64,000 bases of DNA, from IMG/VR virus record IMGVR_UViG_3300032770_000001, positions 124,001-188,000 of that record; one strand, 5' to 3'. Every line of letters begins with the position of its first letter. The first letter of the stretch is position 1. Below, piece by piece: positions 4,447-16,000 of this stretch. The notes under the pieces were generated by a model. That model was not told the DNA's origin. It was given only the letters and a program-made list of their open reading frames with translations, and searched no databases. The translations under genes and the position numbers were made by a program.

Positions 4447-4475
4447 TTGACAAAAGTCTGCTACCGTGGTATTCA
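4447..4475 (+). promoter_or_regulatory. Sigma70-type promoter of the Tyr/Leu tRNA operon
   Basis: TTGACA 4447-4452, 17-nt spacer ending TGG, TATTCA 4470-4475. Confidence 0.75.
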
Positions 4476-4491
4476 TATAGTAGAGCAATTT

Positions 4492-4578
4492 ATGAACCGT
4501 GTCTTCCTAGCATCGTTGCGACTGTATAGCTACCTTAGCGGTGGCTTCGGCGAACGTGTGCGTTGGCGCGGTTGGTAA
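4492..4578 (+). CDS. Putative 28-aa leader peptide MNRVFLASLRLYSYLSGGFGERVRWRGW
   Basis: ATG 16 nt after the -10 element; codons CTA, TTG, CTG, TAT, TAC, CTT clustered; followed by a terminator. Confidence 0.7.
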   Translation: MNRVFLASLRLYSYLSGGFGERVRWRGW

Positions 4579-4600
4579 AAGGCTAACAAAACGTTCGAGA

Positions 4601-4635
4601 GAAGCCGCCAAGGAATTGGCGGCTTTTCCATTTTT
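4601..4635 (+). terminator. Intrinsic terminator (attenuator) ahead of the tRNA genes
   Basis: AAGCCGCCAA-GGAA-TTGGCGGCTT 10-bp stem followed by TTCCATTTTT. Confidence 0.85.
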
Positions 4636-4646
4636 ACTGAGATTTT

Positions 4647-4735
4647 GCATGGGTAGTCAAGCGGCCAACGACAGGAGTCTGTAAAACTCCCGCTCTTAGT
4701 GAGCTACGCAGGTTCAAATCCTGCCCCATGCACCA
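4647..4735 (+). tRNA. tRNA-Tyr(GTA)
   Basis: GCATGGG/CCCATGC acceptor stem, GGAGT-CTGTAAA-ACTCC anticodon arm, long variable arm, encoded CCA. Confidence 0.95.
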
Positions 4736-5345: not shown

Positions 5346-5391
5346 AGATATGGTAGACTCCGTGGTATTAGTTAATCATGAGGTCTGCCAC

Positions 5392-6180
5392 ATGAAGCTG
5401 AAGTACACGAAGGAAATGTTAGAGCCGTTGGTGCGAGAGAGCACCAGTTTTCGGCAGGTCATTGACAAGCTGGGTATACGTCAGGGCGGCGGCACTCAGG
5501 CTAACCTTGTTCGTCGCATTAAGGCGCATGGATTAGACACGTCTCATTTCCTCGGACAGGCGCACGGTCGCGGTAAGCTTCGCGTTCGTTTAATTGCTTC
5601 GGAGGTTCTCGTCAATAATCGGACAGGTCGCAGAGAACACACCGATGTGCTTAGACGGGTGATGTTGGAATCGGGCGTCCCGTACCACTGTGAGCTATGT
5701 CCTAATGATGGAACTTGGCAGGGCCGACCGATAGTTTTGGAGATCGATCACCGGAACGGAAACAATCTGGATAATCGATTGGAGAATCTTCGATTCCTCT
5801 GTCCGAACTGCCATAGCCAACAGGTGACGGATGGTTCGAAAAATATTGCACTTCGTGAATTTGAGAAAAAACAAGGCTGGGTTTTGAAGGATAGTACGAC
5901 GCCAACGGAGTTCATGGCTAAGCACTACGAGGAATTGGCTAATAAAGTGCGCGAGCGATATCCGGATATGGCGTCAATGTTGGAGAGAATTGCGGATAAA
6001 GTCCGCTCCTACCTCAGCATGAACAAGGCAACGGTTCGCGTGTTCATTCGTGCTGACGGACAAGGCGCTACTTTTTATGTGCAGGGCGATGAGGAATGTG
6101 ATGCGATTGCAAAAGTCCGCGATCTGGCTCGCGACCTCACGAAAGAAGCGCAGGAGGGTACAAGATTTCGTTTAGTTTGA
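5392..6180 (+). CDS. HNH endonuclease with a C-terminal extension
   Basis: CELC...LEIDHRNGNNLDNRLENLRFLCPNCH; N-terminus of the kind seen in tRNA-linked phage HNH genes. Confidence 0.9.
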   Translation: MKLKYTKEMLEPLVRESTSFRQVIDKLGIRQGGGTQANLVRRIKAHGLDTSHFLGQAHGRGKLRVRLIASEVLVNNRTGRREHTDVLRRVMLESGVPYHCELCPNDGTWQGRPIVLEIDHRNGNNLDNRLENLRFLCPNCHSQQVTDGSKNIALREFEKKQGWVLKDSTTPTEFMAKHYEELANKVRERYPDMASMLERIADKVRSYLSMNKATVRVFIRADGQGATFYVQGDEECDAIAKVRDLARDLTKEAQEGTRFRLV

Positions 6181-8409: not shown

Positions 8410-8560
8410 CGCGCTGGATTGGCTGTACGAGTTCCGGATTCCGATTGTTCTGGTGATCCTGCTCGTCCTGATGTTTGCGTTTCATAGCTGCGAGTTCCGC
8501 ATTTCGATTGATTCGCGCCCTTCGGAGACGACGACCGAACAAGGTGCTCGAAAATAATTG

Positions 8561-8589
8561 TTGACAGTGAATCGACTTTCTGGTATTGT
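8561..8589 (+). promoter_or_regulatory. Sigma70-type promoter of the Pro tRNA operon
   Basis: TTGACA 8561-8566, 17-nt spacer ending TGG, TATTGT 8584-8589. Confidence 0.8.
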
Positions 8590-8694
8590 ATATGTGTAGT
8601 CGGCCATGCGACAAGCTTCCTTCTAAACTTGCTCATTGGCGAACAAAAACAGCTTTCGCGATATCCGACTCATATATTAGGAGCTAGTCTTCAA

Positions 8695-8772
8695 ATGACA
8701 TTGATGCGACCAACGCCGACGTTTCGACCGTGCACACCTACCGTGCGCGGGGGAATCGGACACACCCTTTAG
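8695..8772 (+). CDS. Putative 25-aa Pro/Thr-rich leader peptide MTLMRPTPTFRPCTPTVRGGIGHTP
   Basis: AGGAG upstream; Pro codons CCA, CCG, CCG, CCT, CCT; followed by mutually exclusive hairpins. Confidence 0.6.
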   Translation: MTLMRPTPTFRPCTPTVRGGIGHTL

Positions 8773-8870
8773 GGTTCCGGTCGCACCCCGCGCTGCTAGG
8801 CGACGGGGCTCTGGCAAGTTGTGAATTTCCCAACATTACTGCCATTTTTACCCCGTCCTTGTGCGTAAGT

Positions 8871-8945
8871 CAGGGCGTGGTGTAGTGGTTGCATCCCGCA
8901 TTTGGAATGCGGTGGTCGCTGGTTCGACCCCAGCCGCCCTGACCA
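8871..8945 (+). tRNA. tRNA-Pro(TGG), divergent
   Basis: CAGGGCG/CGCCCTG acceptor stem, CCGCA-TTTGGAA-TGCGG, ACCA. Confidence 0.9.
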
Positions 8946-8950
8946 ATCAT

Positions 8951-9027
8951 CAGGGTAGAGTTGGGTCTGGTTCAATCCCCGCCTCGGACGCGGGTGTTCG
9001 CGGGTTCAAATCCCGCTGCCCTGACCA
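8951..9027 (+). tRNA. tRNA-Pro(CGG), divergent
   Basis: CAGGGTA/TGCCCTG acceptor stem, CCCGC-CTCGGAC-GCGGG, ACCA. Confidence 0.85.
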
Positions 9028-9043
9028 AATTTCTGAGGTCAGT

Positions 9044-9202
9044 ATGTTTGAGGCGAGTGAGTGGCGGCATAAAGGTTGTGGTGGTCAGCCCTGTGAGTTT
9101 GAGCCGGGGCGGTGGGCTTGCACGGGGTGCAAGCGTGCATGGTACGCTGGAGCGAACTTTTTCACGTACCTCGCAAACGTGGTCTTTGAAAAGAGAGTCT
9201 GA
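9044..9202 (+). CDS. Small Cys-containing protein (52 aa)
   Basis: MFEASEWRHKGCGGQPC...CTGC; short, support is weak. Confidence 0.4.
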   Translation: MFEASEWRHKGCGGQPCEFEPGRWACTGCKRAWYAGANFFTYLANVVFEKRV

Positions 9203-9350
9203 GGTGGAGCGACAGAGGTGGGCAAGTGGCATCGCTGCCTGTGTCGTTGTACGAAGCGTGGGGGCTTGCTCCTGCGTTAGTCCACAGTACAGCCTGCCCA
9301 ACCGATGCCGGATGGCTGCCGAGTCGCCCATAAATTTCGTTTCGAGGAAT

Positions 9351-9427
9351 CAGGATGTAGCTTAGCTTGGTAAAGCGCGTGCTTGGGGTGCACGAGACCG
9401 GGAGTTCAAATCTCCCCATCCTGACCA
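9351..9427 (+). tRNA. tRNA-Pro(GGG)
   Basis: CAGGATG/CATCCTG acceptor stem, CGTGC-TTGGGGT-GCACG, ACCA. Confidence 0.95.
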
Positions 9428-9459
9428 AAAATTTGAGAAGTAACAAGACCGAGGAAGGT

Positions 9460-9516
9460 ACATGGATGCTGGGGCGGTGTGCGCACACGTGAGTTCAATG
9501 CTCACTCCATGTACCA
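9460..9516 (+). ncRNA. 57-nt mini-tRNA (acceptor stem, T-arm and CCA; no D-arm or anticodon loop)
   Basis: ACATGGA/TCCATGT plus ACCA; GTGAG-TTCAATG-CTCAC T-arm. Confidence 0.55.
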
Positions 9517-9586
9517 TCGGATATTCCGACACGCTAAGATTGTACGGTGCGTGACATCGAGTGGAAGTCTCGAAACAGGTTTTTGA

Positions 9587-9658
9587 TGCGGGGTAGTGTA
9601 GTAGCGCACGGAAGTCTCATAAACTTCCAGACCAGTGCGACTCTGGCGACCGCAACCA
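9587..9658 (+). tRNA. Degenerate tRNA(CAT), Met or Ile2
   Basis: GAAGT-CTCATAA-ACTTC anticodon arm, short D-arm, T-loop TGCGACT, mismatch in the acceptor stem, ACCA. Confidence 0.7.
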
Positions 9659-9661
9659 TTT

Positions 9662-9737
9662 CGGTGTGTAGCTCAATGGCTAGAGCACTCGGTTTGGGGC
9701 CGAGGGGTTGGGGGTTCGAGTCCCTCCACGCCGACCA
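9662..9737 (+). tRNA. tRNA-Pro(TGG), canonical
   Basis: CGGTGTG/CACGCCG acceptor stem, CTCGG-TTTGGGG-CCGAG, ACCA. Confidence 0.95.
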
Positions 9738-9752
9738 TTTTGGAGAACGAAC

Positions 9753-10413
9753 ATGATTGTTGAAATTCGAGCAGCGGAAGGTGGAGATGACGCAAAGCTT
9801 CTCGTGTCCGACCAACTCACGATCTATGCGAGATTGGCGGCTCGGAGGGGTCTTTGAGTTTGAGATAACCGAAGAACGTCCCGGCATAGCGGTGTTTCAG
9901 GTGACGGGACAGGGAGCCCCGGCGTTGTTTGCAAATGAGAGCGGGGGGCACCGTTGGCAGCGAGTTCCGCCGACCGAACGATACGGACGACGGCAGACAT
10001 CGACAATCACTGTCGCAGTTTTCGAGGAGCCGAAGGTCGAAGAGATCAACATTCGTGCTCAGGATTTAGAGTGGGATACGTTCCGGAGCCGTGGTAAGGG
10101 CGGACAGAACGTTAACAAGGTCGAGACGGCTGTTCGCGTGACGCACAAGCCGAGTGGCTTGGTCGTGCGTTGTGAGAATGGCCGTAGTCAGTGGCATAAT
10201 AAGCGAACCGCTTTGCAGATTCTTGCGGCACGGTTGGAAGCGCGAGATCGAGAGCAGAGACAAAGCGTAGTGGTTGCAGATCGTCGGTCGCAGATCGGCA
10301 CAGGGCAGCGAGGCGACAAACGTCGTACAGCAAACGAGCGACAGGATCAAGTCACGGATCATGTCACCGGGCAGAAATGGCGCTATACTGATTACGTGAA
10401 GGGGAACTGGTAA
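9753..10413 (+). CDS. Class I release factor homolog (RF1-like PxT, GGQ, no N-terminal domain 1), expressed through a +1 frameshift at CTT-TGA 9852-9857
   Basis: ORF0 MIVEIRAAEGGDDAKLL...RRGL* (9753-9857); the +1 frame continues with RVPPTE, GGQNVNKVETAVR, RSQIG; GGAG RBS at 9742. Confidence 0.9.
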
Positions 10414-11100: not shown

Positions 11101-11177
11101 CGGGGATTAGCTCAGCTTGGTAGAGCGCACGCTTCGGGAGCGTGAGGTCGCAGGTTCGAATCCTGCATCCCCGACCA
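11101..11177 (+). tRNA. tRNA-Pro(CGG), canonical
   Basis: CGGGGAT/ATCCCCG acceptor stem, CACGC-TTCGGGA-GCGTG, ACCA. Confidence 0.97.
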
Positions 11178-11216
11178 ATATCAAACCCTTTAGATAGACC
11201 GATATTTGGAGTCCCC

Positions 11217-11642
11217 TTGGCAAACGACGATAGTTTTTTTGAAGGTGGAGAGCGGCAGGAGAACCTGAACCGCCATAACGCCCGGAAGGGTGGGTATGAC
11301 CCGTTTAGGGTCACCGCAGGTCAAGAAAGACGCGGTGAGCGTATTACGTGGGTCGATGTCTGGCTGGCTAATCCAGACGGAGCCGCCAATCACGATGAGG
11401 CTGAGGCACTCTCGGTAGGCGACGTAATGAAACACGTAGCGTCAGAGAACGATTTGTATGTAGGTTTTGAGAAAGAACTGGCTGAGGTTCAGCGAGAGTC
11501 TTTCGATGAGTCAGGTGTCAAGCTGGCGAACATGGGGTCGAGAGAGTTCTTCAAAGACTCCCCACCCCCGGCACCAGTACCCGCCCCACGTGTGGCGGCA
11601 CCAGTGAAGAAGTCGGATGACGATTTCTTCCCAAAATTTTAA
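11217..11642 (+). CDS. Acidic hypothetical protein
   Basis: TTG start after GGAG; Pro-rich tail ending DDDFFPKF. Confidence 0.5.
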   Translation: MANDDSFFEGGERQENLNRHNARKGGYDPFRVTAGQERRGERITWVDVWLANPDGAANHDEAEALSVGDVMKHVASENDLYVGFEKELAEVQRESFDESGVKLANMGSREFFKDSPPPAPVPAPRVAAPVKKSDDDFFPKF

Positions 11643-11643
11643 C

Positions 11644-11721
11644 GCCTGTGTAGCTCAGACTGGCTAGAGCGCCCGTCTCATAAGCGGGAGGTCGGGGGTT
11701 CGATGCCCTCCACAGGCACCA
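11644..11721 (+). tRNA. tRNA(CAT), elongator Met or Ile2
   Basis: GCCTGTG/CACAGGC acceptor stem, CCCGT-CTCATAA-GCGGG, ACCA. Confidence 0.92.
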
Positions 11722-11909
11722 GTTTTAGGGAGACCGGGAACCTGCGGGCCCTTCCGAGGCTATAGCACCAGCGGCAACGGTGATTAACTGCCCAAACACA
11801 GTATCGGATACCCGGCAATTCTATTCAACAGGAGGATGAAGCAGATGGCTAACCCTAGCATCACCGTACATACCGTGTAAGGTGTGGACGGTGGGAGGTA
11901 AAAAGCCAA

Positions 11910-12227
11910 ATGCGTCACCCTCGCACCCGCGACGAACGTCGCGCTGTACGCGAGCAGATCATTGCTCGTCGCAAATTTATCGCAACCCAGATTTGGGACA
12001 TTCCGTCCTACGTCCGCCCTCCGCATGAAGGCGAATGGAACCGTTGGTCGAAGCCAGAGGAATGGGAGCCATTTCAGTGGGGTCGCTACCACAAGTGGAA
12101 CATGAACTGTGGCGATACCATGTGTCATGGTGCGAAGTATTTCAAATGCGCTTCCAAGCGTCGTAAAGCACGCAAGGAAGCCGAGTCAACCGCCGAGTTT
12201 CGTCGTCGAAATAAGGCCATCGATTGA
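11910..12227 (+). CDS. Basic hypothetical protein
   Basis: 105 aa, Arg/Lys/Trp-rich; GGAGG upstream. Confidence 0.65.
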   Translation: MRHPRTRDERRAVREQIIARRKFIATQIWDIPSYVRPPHEGEWNRWSKPEEWEPFQWGRYHKWNMNCGDTMCHGAKYFKCASKRRKARKEAESTAEFRRRNKAID

Positions 12228-12252
12228 CAATGAAAAGACTTTGGACTAGCGT
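12224..12252 (+). promoter_or_regulatory. Possible sigma70 promoter of the ncRNA array
   Basis: TTGACA 12224-12229, 17 nt, TAGCGT. Confidence 0.45.
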
Positions 12253-12309
12253 ATTATTTATTGCGGGGTCTGGTTAAACCCTAGTGGCGATGACCACTCC
12301 CCGGTTTTA

Positions 12310-12505
12310 CCCCGGCACCCGATACGCAACGGGGCGCTAGTGATTAGGAAGGGTCGAGGCGAACTGCGTGCCCCCAAGGTGGGGCTAGCCGAAAGCCCGG
12401 ATAACGTCCGACGTGGTGCCCGGTTCTAGTCAACCGTCGTGCGTCTACCTTTCGGGGAATTACAAGTACCCGAAAGGACGTGATGATGCAGTGCACTTGC
12501 CGGGG
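12310..12505 (+). ncRNA. Structured RNA A (about 195 nt, class unknown)
   Basis: Closing stem CCCCGGCA/TGCCGGGG; CCTTTCGGG/CCCGAAAGG; GCCCC/GGGGC. Confidence 0.55.
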
Positions 12506-12526
12506 TTCTTTGATCTTTGATAGTTT

Positions 12527-12762
12527 TAGAGTCGAGTGGCCCGTGATTCAACTGGTTCAGTGGTTTCAGTAAGAGGGTCGAATGGCCTGTCAGGGACAAA
12601 TAGATACTCCCTGAGCGATGTTAGACCGCTATCCCCAGTATAAAAAACGCAGCAGCGGGGGCAGTATCCGTAAGGACTGCGGGAGGCTCCACGAAAAGGT
12701 GCTAGACAACCTGTGGGAGGCCGTATCGGGGTTCTAGCTAAACCGACCTGTGCTCGACTCTA
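12527..12762 (+). ncRNA. Structured RNA B (about 236 nt, class unknown)
   Basis: 11-bp closing stem TAGAGTCGAGT/GCTCGACTCTA; flanked by T-runs. Confidence 0.65.
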
Positions 12763-12770
12763 ATTTTTAT

Positions 12771-12862
12771 GGCGGATGCCCGGATAGCGTAAGCAGTCAC
12801 GTGAAAGTCGTGTTAACAGCCGGGGCGGGGATGTTGGCGTAAGCCAAGCGAACCATCCGCCA
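12771..12862 (+). ncRNA. Structured RNA C (92 nt, GNRA loops, ends in CCA)
   Basis: GGCGGATG/CATCCGCC closing stem; GTAA, GAAA and GTAA tetraloops. Confidence 0.6.
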
Positions 12863-12867
12863 AGGTT

Positions 12868-12939
12868 TTGCCGCTGTGGTATGAAACGCTACCAAATGGG
12901 CACGGTTCCGAAAGGACGCAATGGCCCTGCCAGCGGCAA
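12868..12939 (+). ncRNA. Structured RNA D (72 nt)
   Basis: TTGCCGCTG/CAGCGGCAA closing stem; TCC-GAAA-GGA hairpin. Confidence 0.55.
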
Positions 12940-12948
12940 CGTTTTTGA

Positions 12949-13025
12949 TGCGGGGTGGAGCAGTCAGGTAGCTTGTCGGGCTCATAACCCGAAGGTCGGC
13001 GGTTCAAATCCGTCCCCCGCTTCCA
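12949..13025 (+). tRNA. Initiator tRNA-fMet(CAT)
   Basis: Three G-C pairs in TCGGG-CTCATAA-CCCGA; unpaired 1:72 (U:U); CCA. Confidence 0.9.
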
Positions 13026-13029
13026 AGTG

Positions 13030-13318
13030 TTCGCCGCCGTGGGTTGTTAGTTGTACTCAGAGTGCCGTCAGGAACAGCAAGATCGTACTAGTACCTGAGA
13101 GCGCAACCCACGGTTTAGAGGCGATTGCCGTCACCTGCGGATGTAGTACGGTCTGGGCGTCAGGTGCGCCGGGTCGGTGACCCAGACCGGAGCGACATCG
13201 TTGACCGGACATTCCGGTTTCGTTAGCAGGTCCTCATGGGACATCAGCATGGTGCCTGAGTAGTGCTGAAGTTCGAGGAACCGCGAAAGCGTGAAACCTG
13301 TGAAGCGATCCTCAGGCC
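13030..13318 (+). ncRNA. Structured RNA E with an H-type pseudoknot
   Basis: CCGTGGGTTG/CAACCCACGG; crossing helices CACCTG/CAGGTG and CGGTCTGGG/CCCAGACCG. Confidence 0.6.
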
Positions 13319-13331
13319 GATCTTTGAAAAG
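13319..13331 (+). promoter_or_regulatory. rRNA-type boxA-like element
   Basis: GATCTTTGAAAAG between two structured RNAs. Confidence 0.55.
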
Positions 13332-13332
13332 T

Positions 13333-13482
13333 TTGCGGCGGCGTTCCCGGTGTCCCGTCAATAGACTGGTTCCTGACCGGATACGTGAGTAATCGTTCTT
13401 CAAGGGGTGAAATAAAAGAACGGCGCAGAACAGGTTCCTGCGCGTGGGGCTGTGATTTTCCAGCTACTACCTCTCGCCGCAA
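13333..13482 (+). ncRNA. Structured RNA F (150 nt)
   Basis: TTGCGGCG/CGCCGCAA closing stem; GCGCAG/CTGCGC and CGTTCTT/AAGAACG hairpins. Confidence 0.55.
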
Positions 13483-13489
13483 TATAACA

Positions 13490-14025
13490 AATCTGCAAGT
13501 TGCATTCCGATGCCCGAAGCGCCCGATGAGGGTTTGCGGACGGTAGCGTGACTTGCGGAGGGTAGGTGAACGGCTTCACAGCCGCCGTCGAAAGACGGGC
13601 AAGTCCGCCGTAAATTCGGGACGACGTTCACCCGGTCAGGCACTACTAAAACAGAACCGTGGGGTGCCGTCAGTCGAGAGACTGGATGTTTCTGATTGCG
13701 CATGGCATGGCGAGGTCTCCCTATGTTTGGACGGAGGCAGGCCCTTTTCGACAAGGGACATACGTCAGAGCGGAATCACGGTGGGTATGTGGTTGGAACC
13801 ATCCATGTAGTGGCCTGACGCCTAATTTCAGTTTCCGGTCGTGGCGGAAAAGAGACGATAAACAAATAGAGACGCTAAAACTCGCTGAGAGGATGTACCC
13901 TGATTTCGACAGGGATTCTCAGCCTGTGAGACTCTGTAGGTAGCACCCACGTCTGACAGATGTTAGTGGCTCGAAAGAGCAGCAGAGTCATGCACCGTGG
14001 AGAATCGGGAATCGGTGCCGACTGG
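13490..14025 (+). ncRNA. Large ornate RNA (about 540 nt; GOLLD/ROOL-like candidate)
   Basis: Many nested helices including a long-range 13635-13646/13807-13819 pairing, GNRA loops, no credible CDS. Confidence 0.65.
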
Positions 14026-14103
14026 AAGATTTTTGGAGACAACATGAATAGCACTCACACCCCGACCGGATGACCCTTGCTCATCCTTCGGAGGTAAGGT
14101 AAT

Positions 14104-14361
14104 ATGGCATGTGACACCTGTATCTTTCTGAACAACGTTCGGACCCGCCCGGTAGGGAAGGGAAAGGACGAGCAGAAAGGCGAGAAGCTGGAGCCCTGCT
14201 CCATGAAATATGCCTGCAATCCGTTTTGGGACGGAGCGCAGGGAGTGGGCAAGGTCGTGACTGAGTCGTACTGTGCGACCTGCTCGGAAGTAGCTGACAA
14301 ATGTGGATGCACGCAAGGATTGCGTGTGATCCGGCAGCGCAAGCTGCATTATGCTCGGTAA
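14104..14361 (+). CDS. Cys-rich small protein
   Basis: 85 aa with CxxC repeats; GGAGG upstream. Confidence 0.55.
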   Translation: MACDTCIFLNNVRTRPVGKGKDEQKGEKLEPCSMKYACNPFWDGAQGVGKVVTESYCATCSEVADKCGCTQGLRVIRQRKLHYAR

Positions 14362-14363
14362 CC

Positions 14364-14450
14364 ATGAAGATTGACGACGGAACATTGATGGCGATTGGAC
14401 TGCTGGTGTTTGCAGCGTTTTACATTCTGTCTCCATTGATCGTCGGGTAA
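14364..14450 (+). CDS. 28-aa single-TM peptide
   Basis: MKIDDGTLMAIGLLVFAAFYILSPLIVG. Confidence 0.45.
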   Translation: MKIDDGTLMAIGLLVFAAFYILSPLIVG

Positions 14451-14451
14451 G

Positions 14452-14645
14452 TTCGTGCGGCTGACTCGCCTTGAGCAGGGCTATCTTAGGTGCCCTGAGC
14501 GCACACAAGCTTCAGCAGCGACGGAGTTATGACCCGTAGGGGGTTATGAGCCCTTTGGCTGCTGAGAGGGAAGTGAGTACCAGTGGCAACCGCGAAAGCG
14601 CCGATGCCCACGCCCTCCGTCCAGTTGCCTACACGTGCGCAACCT
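14452..14645 (+). ncRNA. Pseudoknotted structured RNA G
   Basis: GCGCAC/GTGCGC closing stem; CAGCAGC/GCTGCTG; loop-loop GACGGAG/CTCCGTC; GGCAAC/GTTGCC. Confidence 0.6.
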
Positions 14646-14707
14646 TTGCTTTTGGACGTGAATATTAAAATGCGAAGGAACGTCATCATAACGTGGTATT
14701 AGGTAAT

Positions 14708-15034
14708 ATGGCTGCTGAAATTCTCGAAGACGTTTACTTGCACATTGGCAACGGTGGGGTCCAGTTTCAGGTCCACCGGGACAATAAAGGGCGTTGCCTC
14801 CTGAAGGTTGGAGCATCGCATTTCGGTCAGAAGACCAACACGATGGAGTTGCTTGTGACTCCCGATAGCCTGCGGCAGATCGGCGAAGCTTTTGTTCGCG
14901 CATCGCAGCAAGAGTTCCCCGGCAAGCCGTATGTTTACAGCGCCGAGGTTCCGGTGTACACTGGTTCTGGTAACGCCGAAAGCAGCACGGGCGGCGATGA
15001 ACCAAAGCAGGAACCGCAGCAATTGACAGTTTAA
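14708..15034 (+). CDS. Hypothetical protein
   Basis: ATG 6 nt after GGTATTA; 108 aa. Confidence 0.7.
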   Translation: MAAEILEDVYLHIGNGGVQFQVHRDNKGRCLLKVGASHFGQKTNTMELLVTPDSLRQIGEAFVRASQQEFPGKPYVYSAEVPVYTGSGNAESSTGGDEPKQEPQQLTV

Positions 15035-15090
15035 CGTTCCCGAACGCAAACCGGGTGGTGGATCGTATCACTGAGACGTGATGCCCCTGC

Positions 15091-15120
15091 GGGGCAACCA
15101 AAAGTTGCCCCCGTTGTTTT
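15091..15120 (+). terminator. Intrinsic terminator
   Basis: GGGGCAAC-CAAAA-GTTGCCCC followed by CGTTGTTTT. Confidence 0.65.
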
Positions 15121-15132
15121 ATCAAAGATTTT

Positions 15133-15315
15133 ATGGCAGAAACGACCGAACGTTATATCGTGACTCACCACCAGCCATCTGAGTGGTACAACGTTTGGGA
15201 TAAACTGTGGACGACTGATGTCGTAAAAGTCAGCAGTCTCACAGGACGCGGCAAAGAGATTGCCGACAAGATTTGCGCAGACTTGAACGCTCACCCGTTC
15301 CCGCCTGCGGAATGA
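15133..15315 (+). CDS. Small hypothetical protein
   Basis: 60-aa ORF. Confidence 0.55.
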   Translation: MAETTERYIVTHHQPSEWYNVWDKLWTTDVVKVSSLTGRGKEIADKICADLNAHPFPPAE

Positions 15316-15411
15316 GTTTTCGAACTATTAGGATCATTACTGAATGAAGCTCTACGACTACACTCTCGACTTGTTTACCAGCCCCTTCCGGGGCTTGTAA
15401 TACGTGTGTCT

Positions 15412-15488
15412 GGGGCGGTAGCTCAGTCCGGTAGAGCGAGGGCCTGAAAAGCCCTGCGTCGTAGGTTCAAATCCTACCCGTCCCACCA
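15412..15488 (+). tRNA. tRNA-Phe(GAA)
   Basis: GGGGCGG/CCGTCCC acceptor stem, AGGGC-CTGAAAA-GCCCT, ACCA. Confidence 0.95.
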
Positions 15489-15514
15489 AATTTCTCAATC
15501 ACACAATTCAAATT

Positions 15515-16000
15515 TCAAGGGGACGTAGCTGATGTGGTCTTAGCGCGGGCCTGAAAAACCTGAGATGGAGGTTCGATTCCTCTCGTCCCCACCAATTTTC
15601 TTCGCGCCGTAACTTTCCGATGACAATTCGCGCAACGTACCTCGCACTTGGCGATCTCCCGTTTGATGGAGTCTAAACTGTATCCGCTTCTGACCATGAA
15701 ACAAATCTCCAGCCGTTTCTTACCACGAACATGGTCAAAATCAAGGCATACCGGATCAGTCTCCGGGCAGTCCACGCAGCCATGAGTCGCGAGATATGAT
15801 TGGACATACCGTTTGTTCCGTAACCTATCCGCACGCTTTCGAGCCCTGACCTTAGTTGCTCGCGTTTTCGAGTTCGCGTAGTATCCGGTATTGTAGTTGG
15901 ACATACAGGTCTTGCAGTGTGAACGGCGAGTGCCGAGGGTTTTATTCCGGAAATGGAACTCGCCCTCGGCTTTATTCGCATTGCATTTCGTACAAATCAT
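15515..16000 (-). CDS. HNH endonuclease whose 3' end overlaps tRNA-Phe in antisense
   Basis: CVDC...LDFDHVRG...CEVRCANCH; ATG 16000 overlaps the upstream TGA. Confidence 0.85.
   Translation of the reverse strand: MICTKCNANKAEGEFHFRNKTLGTRRSHCKTCMSNYNTGYYANSKTRATKVRARKRADRLRNKRYVQSYLATHGCVDCPETDPVCLDFDHVRGKKRLEICFMVRSGYSLDSIKREIAKCEVRCANCHRKVTARRKLVGTRGIEPPSQVFQARAKTTSATSP
15519..15594 (+). tRNA. tRNA-Phe(GAA), divergent
   Basis: GGGGACG/CGTCCCC acceptor stem, loop CTGAAAA, TTCGATT T-loop, ACCA. Confidence 0.9.

What the first reader, a model, noticed from the sequence alone, without database searches (positions are those of the whole stretch)
8561..9737. Second leader/attenuator: Pro-rich peptide ahead of the Pro tRNA operon
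Seen: a promoter with the same layout (TTGACA-17-TGG TATT), then an AGGAG-preceded 25-aa ORF with five Pro codons (CCA, CCG, CCG, CCT, CCT) that cover all three downstream anticodons (TGG, CGG, GGG). GCGCGGGG in the leader (8745-8752) pairs with CCCCGCGC (8786-8793), which alternatively forms hairpin 8786-8808; a weaker hairpin with a T5 tail follows (8812-8849). The repeat of the same architecture supports the first attenuator. Caveats: the GC hairpin has no adjacent U-tract, and the leader also has six Thr codons with no tRNA-Thr in the window.
Basis: partly seen in the sequence, partly recalled or inferred. Interest (0 to 1): 0.75.

Follow-up and report, generated by a model that had tools for sequence, protein, structure and literature searches.

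The report
Codon-sensing leader before phage tRNA genes
A 455-kb soil phage puts a short, conserved mini-gene written in proline, methionine and phenylalanine codons, joined to a switchable RNA structure, ahead of its Pro/Met/Phe tRNA genes; it is one of six such leaders that appear to let the phage make tRNAs only when the ribosome runs short of them.

Summary
There is a strong sigma-70-type promoter, a 25-codon ORF preceded by AGGAG, and GCGCGGGG/CCCCGCGC/GCGACGGGG alternative pairings. The ORF has four Pro codons, not five.

The window lies in a 455,708-bp phage with 61 tRNA genes. Six tRNA clusters each carry the same promoter type and a short ORF enriched in the codons their own tRNAs read (Fisher p about 1e-12). 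The match is specific to the reading frame. It is repeated in two distant relatives and in the cultured Tunturiibacter phage Tunturi_5, where the clusters are partitioned differently.

About 20 orthologous Pro leaders keep the ORF and three mutually exclusive helices, with compensatory changes. Met and Phe codons recur in them; Thr does not. The cognate set is therefore Pro+Met+Phe, matching the tRNAs downstream.

Five leaders end in textbook terminators. The Pro leader never does, in any lineage. I conclude it is a ribosome-sensing leader switch. Its output step is unresolved: either a helix relay reaching the first tRNA's acceptor strand, or weak termination. No RNA data were available. I found no earlier description.

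The parts
8551..8589 (+). Promoter: A/T-rich UP-like block (8551-8559), -35 TTGACA (8561-8566), extended -10 TG (8581-8582), -10 TATTGT (8584-8589). Predicted transcription start near 8596.
   Evidence: The same promoter family (TTGACA, 14-15 nt, TGGTATT) stands before six tRNA clusters of the genome.
8596..8671 (+). 5'-UTR stem-loop. It varies among relatives and is absent where the -10 box abuts the ATG, which suggests near-leaderless mRNAs there.
   Evidence: Fold; alignment A1.
8679..8683 (+). Shine-Dalgarno AGGAG, 11 nt before the start codon.
8695..8772 (+). Leader ORF, 25 codons plus TAG. Cognate codons: Met 8704, Pro 8710, Pro 8716, Phe 8722, Pro 8728, Pro 8737.
   Evidence: Orthologs keep a 21-25 codon ORF with varying stop codons. 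Cognate share is 36% in frame against 10% and 5% out of frame.
8745..8752 (+). Segment 1 (GCGCGGGG), inside the 3' part of the ORF.
   Evidence: Pairs with segment 2 in 100% of cells, with 4 of 8 pairs changed on both sides.
8753..8785 (+). Cap of the long 1:2 hairpin, with the stop codon (8770-8772) in its apical loop. The sequence is hypervariable but stays self-complementary in each relative.
   Evidence: -30.8 kcal/mol, z -4.1; the variant contig.
8786..8793 (+). Segment 2 (CCCCGCGC). It pairs with either segment 1 or segment 3.
   Evidence: Three-way covariation at alignment columns 77/123/134.
8800..8808 (+). Segment 3 (GCGACGGGG). With segment 2 it forms a GC hairpin that occupies the position of the sister leaders' terminators but has no U tract. 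Alternatively it pairs with segment 4.
8812..8849 (+). Inner weak hairpin with the conserved loop motif GAAUUUCC, followed by T5 (8845-8849).
8851..8870 (+). Segment 4 (CCCCGTC, 8851-8857) and a U/G-rich tail. It pairs with segment 3 or, when segment 3 is taken, with the 5' end of the first tRNA (predicted -13.6 kcal/mol).
8871..9737 (+). tRNA-Pro UGG (8871-8945), CGG (8951-9027), GGG (9351-9427) and UGG (9662-9737), with a 52-aa Cys-rich ORF (9044-9202) between them.
11101..15594 (+). Further same-strand tRNAs that match the leader's codons: Pro CGG 11101-11177, Met 11644-11721 and 12949-13025, Phe 15412-15488 and 15519-15594. Whether they belong to the same transcript is not shown.
   Evidence: The order Pro-Met-Phe-PolA is kept in relatives.
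4447..4640 (+). Sister leader in the same window (Tyr/Leu): promoter TTGACA 4447-4452 and TGGTATTCA 4467-4475, ORF 4492-4578 (MNRVFLASLRLYSYLSGGFGERVRWRGW*), textbook terminator 4599-4628 plus U tract, then tRNA-Tyr at 4647.

Best explanation
The leader is a ribosome-sensing RNA switch placed between a strong host-type promoter and the phage's Pro (and probably Met and Phe) tRNA genes. It is one of six paralogous leaders, each written in the codons that its own downstream tRNAs read.

Proposed working, all of it inferred:
- If charged Pro-, Met- or Phe-tRNA is scarce, the first ribosome stalls in codons 3-13. Segment 1 stays free, and the long 1:2 hairpin forms with the stop codon in its loop. 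Segment 3 then pairs with segment 4, the 5' strand of the first tRNA stays free, and the tRNAs are made.
- If decoding is smooth, the ribosome unwinds segment 1 and reaches the stop codon. Segment 2 then pairs with segment 3. This hairpin is the positional equivalent of the terminators in the five sister leaders.

In the sister leaders the second state ends transcription at a U tract. In the Pro leader there is no U tract. My preferred output, at about 0.4, is a relay: free segment 4 captures the 5' acceptor strand of the first tRNA-Pro, so the precursor misfolds or is poorly processed. In some relatives segment 2 captures that strand directly. The alternative, at about 0.3, is weak termination.

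Shown: the ORF, the match between codons and tRNAs, and the three competing helices with covariation. Inferred: stalling, which state means on, and the output step.
For: 1. Genome-wide pattern. Six clusters share the promoter type plus a short ORF.
- In a 6x6 test of leader against cluster codon sets, the matching cluster gives the lowest p in all six rows; Fisher p = 8e-13.
- The cognate share is 42% in frame against 13% and 16% in the other two frames.

2. Replication.
- G002 (463 kb) and G003 (332 kb) have the same leader types (Fisher p = 4e-13 for G002).
- In cultured Tunturi_5 the tRNAs are split into three clusters of different composition, and the three leader ORFs follow the new split: matching-cluster p = 1e-3, 6e-4 and 2e-4, all other combinations >= 0.8.

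3. Pro leader orthologs. There are 19 distinct sequences from IMG/VR and metagenomes.
- The ORF is kept at 21-25 codons with stops TAA, TAG or TGA, and the stop codon sits in the hairpin loop.
- Pro/Met/Phe make up 26% of the positions not fixed by my search pattern, against roughly a tenth in the genome.
- A strain variant changes Thr to Met twice and Val to Met once. It carries a 5-nt net deletion yet keeps an in-frame stop 14 nt before segment 2.

4. Helices.
- 1:2 is 100% paired, with 4 of 8 pairs changed on both sides and 0 of 500 shuffles reaching the observed value.
- 2:3 is 89% paired.
- 3:4 is 93.5% paired, with 2 pairs changed on both sides.

5. Ribosome-position folding model. In all five canonical leaders the terminator's 5' arm is sequestered while the ribosome sits in the cognate run, and freed when it reaches the stop. 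The Pro leader behaves the same way for 1:2 against 2:3.

6. Relay.
- In L009, L011 and L018, segment 3 is the first 4-5 nt of tRNA-Pro, and segment 2 complements all 7 nt of the acceptor strand.
- In this genome, segment 4 with the tRNA 5' end folds at -13.6 kcal/mol, z -3.0.
- The same pairing is the minimum-energy fold in 5 of 13 orthologs.
Against: - No transcript data: no RNA run was listed. Transcription start, translation of the ORF and any premature 3' end are all unobserved.
- In this genome alone the codon enrichment is weak: 6/24, p=0.04, and only 2 of 17 positions not fixed by my pattern.
- No canonical terminator is present.
- Equilibrium folding gives mixed answers about which state forms at which codon. 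A further possible helix (CCGTGCAC 8728-8735 with segment 1, -14.4 kcal/mol) could invert the logic for early stalls.
- The relay would act directly only on the first tRNA.
- The complementarity of segment 4 to the tRNA 5' strand partly follows from segment 3 resembling that strand, so it is not independent evidence.
- Most orthologs were found with a pattern that fixes the M-R-P and F-R-P codons. That is an ascertainment bias. Only L013 and Tunturi_5 are free of it.
- Co-transcription of the Met and Phe tRNAs with the leader is not shown. A promoter-like site lies at 12224-12252.
Confidence: 0.65

Rival explanations
1. This is a classical four-segment (trp-type) transcription attenuator. 1:2 is the anti-antiterminator, 2:3 the antiterminator, and 3:4 with its U/G-rich tail a weak or factor-assisted intrinsic terminator. 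Stalling near codons 14-17 masks segment 1 and gives read-through. A ribosome at the stop codon, 9-13 nt before segment 2, hinders 2:3 and gives termination.
For: - Three mutually exclusive helices, each with covariation, are the hallmark of trp-type leaders.
- In the L007, L054, L056 and L058 lineage, segment 4 is followed directly by AUUUUGUGCUUU or AUUUUGUAC. Most other lineages have UGUGU or UUUGU runs within about 10 nt.
- The stop-to-segment-2 spacing is held at 9-14 nt.
Against: - In this genome the tail is CUUGUGCGUAAGU, and the scan calls no terminator.
- The first hungry codons (Met4, Pro6, Phe10, Pro12) lie too far upstream to mask segment 1. Under this model starvation would favour 1:2 plus 3:4, meaning termination, which is the wrong sign.
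- L009, L011 and L018 lack segment 4 altogether yet keep the ORF, 1:2 and 2:3.
- The five sister leaders keep perfect U tracts, so loss of the U tract in every Pro lineage looks selected rather than tolerated.
Confidence: 0.2
2. The ORF encodes a conserved micropeptide, or a ribosome-arrest peptide acting through its own sequence (M-R-P ... F-R-P-C-x-P). The hairpins are only precursor-processing or stability elements. Supply of charged tRNA is not sensed.
For: The core M-R-P and F-R-P-C is conserved at the amino-acid level in all orthologs. L013, found by gene order alone, also has M-R-P. Proline is common at known arrest sites; that point rests on my own knowledge.
Against: - Much of the core conservation is imposed by my search pattern.
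- The C-terminal third changes freely in peptide sequence while keeping RNA complementarity (VRGG becomes MRRE in L009, with compensating changes in segments 2 and 3).
- The variable positions drift towards Met, Phe and Pro specifically.
- The same codon-to-tRNA logic holds for five unrelated peptide sequences, and again in Tunturi_5.
Confidence: 0.08
3. The leader binds tRNA directly, T-box-like, with codon runs acting as specifiers for uncharged tRNA and no translation involved.
For: Runs of cognate codons could in principle pair with anticodons.
Against: - No Rfam family, T-box included, matches 8590-8872 even at E <= 10.
- The runs lie in a start-to-stop ORF with a Shine-Dalgarno sequence, or directly behind the -10 box.
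- Insertions and deletions in the codon run come in multiples of three, and the stop codon is always kept in frame.
- The enrichment is specific to the reading frame.
Confidence: 0.03
4. The Pro leader of this genome is a decayed or chance arrangement with no regulatory role.
For: It has the weakest cognate enrichment of all the orthologs and no terminator.
Against: The ORF and all three helices are kept across about 20 lineages with compensatory changes, and in a co-occurring strain variant.
Confidence: 0.04

Closest known systems
Leader-peptide (ribosome-mediated) transcription attenuators of amino-acid biosynthetic operons in Enterobacteria (trpL, hisL, thrL, leuL, pheL, ilvL)
   Same: A promoter-proximal short ORF rich in regulatory codons, mutually exclusive helices that overlap the end of the ORF, and a decision set by where the first ribosome stands. 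The five sister leaders also end in a GC hairpin plus U tract.
   Different: The regulated genes are tRNA genes of a phage, not biosynthetic enzymes. One leader senses a group of amino acids that matches a mixed tRNA cluster. The untranslated default in the sister leaders is predicted to be read-through. The Pro leader has no terminator. No Rfam leader family matches.
pheST (pheM) attenuator of E. coli, which controls phenylalanyl-tRNA synthetase
   Same: A leader-peptide attenuator that feeds back on the translation apparatus (charged tRNA supply) rather than on amino-acid synthesis. This rests on my own knowledge.
   Different: It controls a synthetase protein operon, is a single-amino-acid sensor, and has a canonical terminator.
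T-box riboswitches
   Same: They sense tRNA status to control genes of the aminoacylation pathway through an antiterminator/terminator choice.
   Different: T-boxes bind uncharged tRNA directly and are not translated. Here there is an ORF with frame-specific codon enrichment and no T-box match.
Translation-arrest leader peptides (SecM, TnaC, Erm leaders)
   Same: A stalled ribosome on a short upstream ORF remodels the downstream RNA structure. Proline is prominent in these peptides.
   Different: Those stall through peptide-tunnel interactions or a small-molecule ligand. Here the peptide varies and the codon identity follows the downstream tRNAs.

Membership tests
Ribosome-mediated (leader-peptide) transcription attenuator | Short ORF with a start codon, ribosome-binding context and stop codon, directly behind a promoter and ahead of the regulated genes | tested here: met
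   Promoter 8561-8589, AGGAG 8679-8683, ORF 8695-8772. The ORF is kept in 19 orthologs.
Ribosome-mediated (leader-peptide) transcription attenuator | Regulatory codons cognate to the regulated product are over-represented in the ORF | tested here: met
   Weak in this copy (Pro 4/24, p=0.03; Pro+Met+Phe 6/24, p=0.04). Strong across the orthologs (36% in frame against 10% and 5%) and across the six leaders (Fisher p = 8e-13).
Ribosome-mediated (leader-peptide) transcription attenuator | Mutually exclusive RNA helices, one of which overlaps the 3' part of the ORF | tested here: met
   Helices 1:2, 2:3 and 3:4 with compensatory changes; z-scores -3.3 to -4.1.
Ribosome-mediated (leader-peptide) transcription attenuator | Intrinsic terminator (GC-rich hairpin directly followed by a U tract) as one of the alternative structures | tested here: not met
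   The scan finds none in 8590-8870 but does find the Tyr/Leu leader's terminator. None is present after 2:3 in any ortholog, and only some lineages have a U-rich tail after 3:4. The five sister leaders and their orthologs do meet this feature.
Ribosome-mediated (leader-peptide) transcription attenuator | Premature 3' ends, and read-through that rises when the cognate charged tRNA is limiting | not testable with these tools
   No RNA run was listed for this sequence.
T-box riboswitch, or any curated Rfam leader family (Thr, Leu, His, Trp leaders) | Match to the family covariance model | tested here: not met
   No family other than tRNA reached gathering score in the window. There was no hit at E <= 10 in 8590-8872.

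The most novel reading that the evidence does not exclude
A lineage of jumbo phages of Acidobacteriota runs a codon-addressed feedback network. Every tRNA cluster is gated by a leader ORF spelled in the codons that the cluster's own tRNAs decode, so the phage makes a given set of tRNAs only when ribosomes stall for want of them. In the Pro/Met/Phe leader the gate is not a terminator. It is a relay of four or five competing helices that ends in the acceptor strand of the first tRNA, which would be translation-controlled tRNA folding or processing, a mechanism not known so far.
Probability: 0.35. Interest if true: 0.92.

Novelty: new variant of a known kind. Interest (0 to 1): 0.85.

Why it matters
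Leader-peptide attenuation is textbook for amino-acid biosynthesis. I found no report of it in front of tRNA genes, or in phages, in the literature I could search.

If it holds:
- It explains why these huge phages sort their 40-70 tRNA genes by amino acid.
- It shows that phage tRNA supply is regulated by demand, codon group by codon group, rather than being constitutive.
- It bears on current ideas that phage tRNAs compensate for codon-usage mismatch or for host tRNA-cleaving defences.
- It offers compact natural sensors of the availability of specific charged tRNAs.
- The terminator-less Pro leader could reveal a new way to couple translation to tRNA maturation.

A cultured phage-host pair (Tunturi_5 on Tunturiibacter psychrotolerans) carries the same system, so all of this is directly testable.

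Tried and rejected
- **Alternative genetic code.** The genome has two tRNAs with anticodon CUA, and both nearby stops in the leader frame are TAG. But opening TAG lengthens ORFs no more than opening TAA, and TAG ends 121 of 631 long ORFs. Orthologous leaders end in TAA or TGA. Standard code kept.
- **Relatives through neighbouring proteins.** The NADAR protein and the RF2-like protein gave nothing in IMG/VR. A promoter pattern found only a near-identical fragment without the Pro cluster. An exact 19-mer of segments 2-3 found nothing.
- **RNA-seq evidence.** No RNA run was listed. The DNA runs gave one informative variant contig, of which only 15 of its 20 substitutions are printed.
- **Thr as a regulatory amino acid.** Rejected, because Thr is not conserved.
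- **The weak hairpin plus T5 (8812-8849) as the terminator.** The stem is only -7.9 kcal/mol. The U run is absent in several lineages and lies inside the 3:4 domain. Not favoured.
- **The 3:4 domain as a degenerate tRNA.** No tRNA or other Rfam hit. Left open.
- **Equilibrium folding without forbidding pairs across the ribosome.** This gave misleading profiles and was replaced by the model.
- **Earlier literature.** Nine full-text searches and two papers read found no description. I could not confirm from memory an attenuator before any E. coli tRNA gene.
Full report
**What the window is**

The window is bases 124,001-188,000 of a 455,708-bp linear IMG/VR phage record, estimated complete, from a wetland metagenome. 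ARAGORN finds 61 tRNA genes and a tmRNA. The tRNA genes are sorted into clusters by amino acid. The window holds Tyr-Tyr-Leu x5, Pro x5, Met x2 and Phe x2, all on the + strand. Rfam finds only tRNAs in the window. The standard genetic code fits the genome.

**Checking the observation**

The ORF reads MTLMRPTPTFRPCTPTVRGGIGHTL*. It has four Pro codons, not five, and six Thr codons. The terminator scan reports nothing between the promoter and the first tRNA, but it does report the hairpin plus U tract in the Tyr/Leu leader at 4599-4628.

**The wider pattern in this genome**

A search for the promoter sequence showed one promoter family: an A/T-rich block, TTGACA, 14-15 nt, then TGGTATT. It occurs at six places in the genome, each upstream of a tRNA cluster. 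Behind each promoter lies a short ATG-to-stop ORF:

| Leader ORF | tRNA cluster downstream |
|---|---|
| MNMTSQTRTTTSTQRITTATTGGFTFEDGWDG | Ile, Thr, Gln |
| MNFNFTNAGWQTGAVGAVAAVCEAEGIVAAGAADSVPSEGWDD | Val, Gly, Ala, Cys, Asp, Glu |
| MNRVFLASLRLYSYLSGGFGERVRWRGW | Tyr, Leu |
| MVRIHALSSSSSSSRSGSGGVGVCL | Ser x4 plus Leu-UAA (the single TTA codon directly precedes the Ser run) |
| MTFMTAKSSRKHQRRNNRWFGTGLFSEGWGA | (Trp), Gln, His, Arg, Asn, Lys |
| the Pro leader (this finding) | Pro, Met, Phe |

I scored each leader against the codon set readable by each cluster. The matching cluster gives the lowest p-value in all six rows, and the combined p is 8e-13. The same nucleotides read in the other two frames carry 13% and 16% cognate codons, against 42% in frame. 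Five of the six leaders end in a textbook intrinsic terminator just before the first tRNA. The Pro leader does not.

**Relatives**

The family-A DNA polymerase of the window retrieved related huge-phage contigs that keep the order Tyr/Leu, Pro, Met, Phe, polymerase.

- Two complete relatives, G002 (463 kb) and G003 (332 kb), have polymerases about 55% identical. They have the same leader types with diverged peptides but the same codon logic. For G002 the matching cluster gives the lowest p in five of six rows, Fisher p = 4e-13.
- The cultured jumbo phage Tunturi_5 of Tunturiibacter psychrotolerans (Acidobacteriota; PP885688.1) has a polymerase 54% identical. It carries 38-43 tRNAs in three clusters with a different partition of amino acids. 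Each cluster is preceded by an ORF plus terminator, and the ORF's composition follows the new partition: matching-cluster p = 1e-3, 6e-4 and 2e-4, all other combinations >= 0.8.
- The paper describing Tunturi_5 mentions neither leaders nor attenuation. One of the three ORFs is annotated there as a hypothetical protein.

**Orthologs of the Pro leader**

A degenerate pattern taken from five synteny-found leaders retrieved 19 distinct orthologous leaders from IMG/VR and public metagenomes, plus some chance hits that I set aside.

- All keep an ORF of 21-25 codons. The stop codon varies (TAA, TAG, TGA) and always lies in the apical loop of a long hairpin.
- Insertions and deletions within the codon run are multiples of three.
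- The pattern fixes the M-R-P and F-R-P codons, so I counted only the other positions. Pro, Met and Phe fill 26% of them, against roughly a tenth genome-wide. In-frame share is 36%, against 10% and 5% out of frame.
- Thr is not conserved. Its positions hold Met, Phe, Ser, Gly or Asn in the relatives.
- A strain variant in two other wetland samples changes Thr to Met twice and Val to Met once. It has a net 5-nt deletion between segments 1 and 2 and still ends in frame (TAA), 14 nt before segment 2 rather than 13 (only 15 of its 20 substitutions were printed).
- The leader therefore matches Pro, Met and Phe, the three tRNA types that follow on the same strand up to the polymerase gene.
- L013, found by gene order alone, has a different peptide (MRNLNPMRPQPKWLGVYVTD) but the same RNA layout.

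**RNA structure**

Three mutually exclusive helices are conserved.

| Helix | Position in this genome | Cells paired | Pairs changed on both sides | Other |
|---|---|---|---|---|
| 1:2 | 8745-8752 with 8786-8793, capped by a variable hairpin holding the stop codon | 100% of 152 | 4 of 8 | 0 of 500 shuffles reach the observed value |
| 2:3 | 8786-8793 with 8800-8808 | 89% (the unpaired cells are misaligned indel-bearing rows) | 2 | |
| 3:4 | 8802-8808 with 8851-8857 | 93.5% | 2 | |

One position covaries three ways across segments 1, 2 and 3. In L009, segment 1 reads GCGTCGGG, segment 2 CCCGACGC and segment 3 GCGT..CGGG, while the peptide changes from VRGG to MRRE. The constraint in that part of the ORF is therefore on the RNA, not the peptide. 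In this genome the helices fold at -30.8, -16.2 and -20.7 kcal/mol, each 3 to 4 sd below shuffles.

**How it probably works**

I modelled a ribosome at each codon, masking its footprint and forbidding pairs that would span it.

- In all five canonical leaders, the terminator's 5' arm is captured by a segment in the 3' part of the ORF while the ribosome sits in the cognate-codon run. It is released when the ribosome reaches the stop codon. That is the classical logic: hungry codons give read-through.
- The Pro leader behaves the same way if 1:2 is read as the antiterminator and 2:3 as the terminator hairpin. P(1:2) is about 1.0 at codons 1-13, 0.56 at Pro15 and 0.14 at the stop.
- Position, shape and energy of 2:3 match the sister terminators (-16 to -22 kcal/mol). 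It is never followed by a U tract, in any of about 20 lineages, while the sister leaders keep perfect U tracts in every genome examined.

Two outputs remain possible.

(a) A relay.
- When 2:3 forms, segment 4 is left free and can pair with the 5' end of the first tRNA. This is -13.6 kcal/mol here and the minimum-energy fold in 5 of 13 orthologs.
- In L009, L011 and L018 the spacer is missing. Segment 3 is the first 4-5 nt of the tRNA, and segment 2 complements all seven nucleotides of the acceptor strand.
- Smooth translation would then trap the tRNA's 5' strand, and stalling would free it.

(b) Weak termination. 3:4 plus its U/G-rich tail could be a poor terminator. This is plausible in the L007/L054/L056/L058 lineage (AUUUUGU directly after the stem) but weak here (CUUGUGCG). 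It also gives the wrong sign for stalls at the early codons.

I prefer (a) but cannot decide between them without RNA data. A further possible helix (8728-8735 with segment 1) was not testable, because my search pattern fixes those bases.

**Comparison with what is known**

The system works like the leader-peptide attenuators of enterobacterial amino-acid operons and of pheST, but the regulated genes are phage tRNA genes. No Rfam leader or T-box model matches. Nine full-text searches and two papers read turned up no description of leader ORFs before tRNA genes. The library is incomplete, so I cannot exclude priority elsewhere.

**Verdict**

The specific label 'attenuator' is only partly earned for the Pro leader, because a defining feature, the terminator, was tested and not met. 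The sensor part is well supported by comparative evidence. The output step is inferred.

Noticed in passing
window 9753-10413: A release-factor-2-like gene starts 16 nt after the last tRNA-Pro. Frame 0 reads MIVEIRAAEGGDDAKLLVSDQLTIYARLAARRGL and stops at CTT TGA (9852-9857), preceded by AGGGG, which is the classical prfB +1 frameshift site. The +1 frame carries the PCRF and RF-1 domains. The protein is short (about 250 aa).
   Followed up: partly
genome 25852-26302 and 30867-31271 (outside the window): There are two tRNAs with anticodon CUA (amber suppressors), one tRNA-like gene with a 4-nt anticodon call, and a tmRNA. Together with the phage RF2 this hints at manipulation of stop-codon reading. 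TAG does not look recoded genome-wide. G002 and G003 also carry CUA tRNAs.
   Followed up: partly
window 12224-12948: A promoter-like site resembling the leader promoters (TTGACA ATGAAAAGACTTTGGAC TAGCGT) is followed by about 700 nt of GC-rich, apparently structured, non-coding sequence that runs up to tRNA-Met. It has no Rfam match. It could be an unknown RNA.
   Followed up: no
genome about 283750-283826 (outside the window): A tRNA-like sequence with anticodon CCA (Trp), missed by ARAGORN, lies just before tRNA-Gln. G002 has a called tRNA-Trp at the same place, and the leader there contains Trp codons.
   Followed up: partly
window 8820-8833 and orthologs: The loop motif GAAUUUCC / GAAUUCC of the inner hairpin is conserved across most Pro leaders, although its stem varies. 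Its function is unknown. It contains the Phe anticodon triplet GAA and Phe codons.
   Followed up: no
window 4540-4578; L065 971-1003: Leader modules appear to be exchanged. The C-terminal GGFGERVRWRGW plus terminator of this genome's Tyr/Leu leader is the tail of the Ser leader in G002. Several leaders end in (E/D)GW(D/G), which is the 5' arm of a hairpin holding the stop codon in its loop.
   Followed up: partly
window 5350-6180, 9044-9202; L003 500-830: An HNH endonuclease gene and small Cys-rich (zinc-ribbon-like) ORFs are interspersed among the tRNA genes. In the Ser cluster an HNH gene sits between the leader's terminator and the first tRNA.
   Followed up: no
L007, L009, L011, L016 (first tRNA-Pro): In most relatives the first tRNA-Pro(UGG) is unusually long (87-90 nt), with an enlarged D region and a long variable region. 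This genome has a normal 75-nt tRNA at that place.
   Followed up: no
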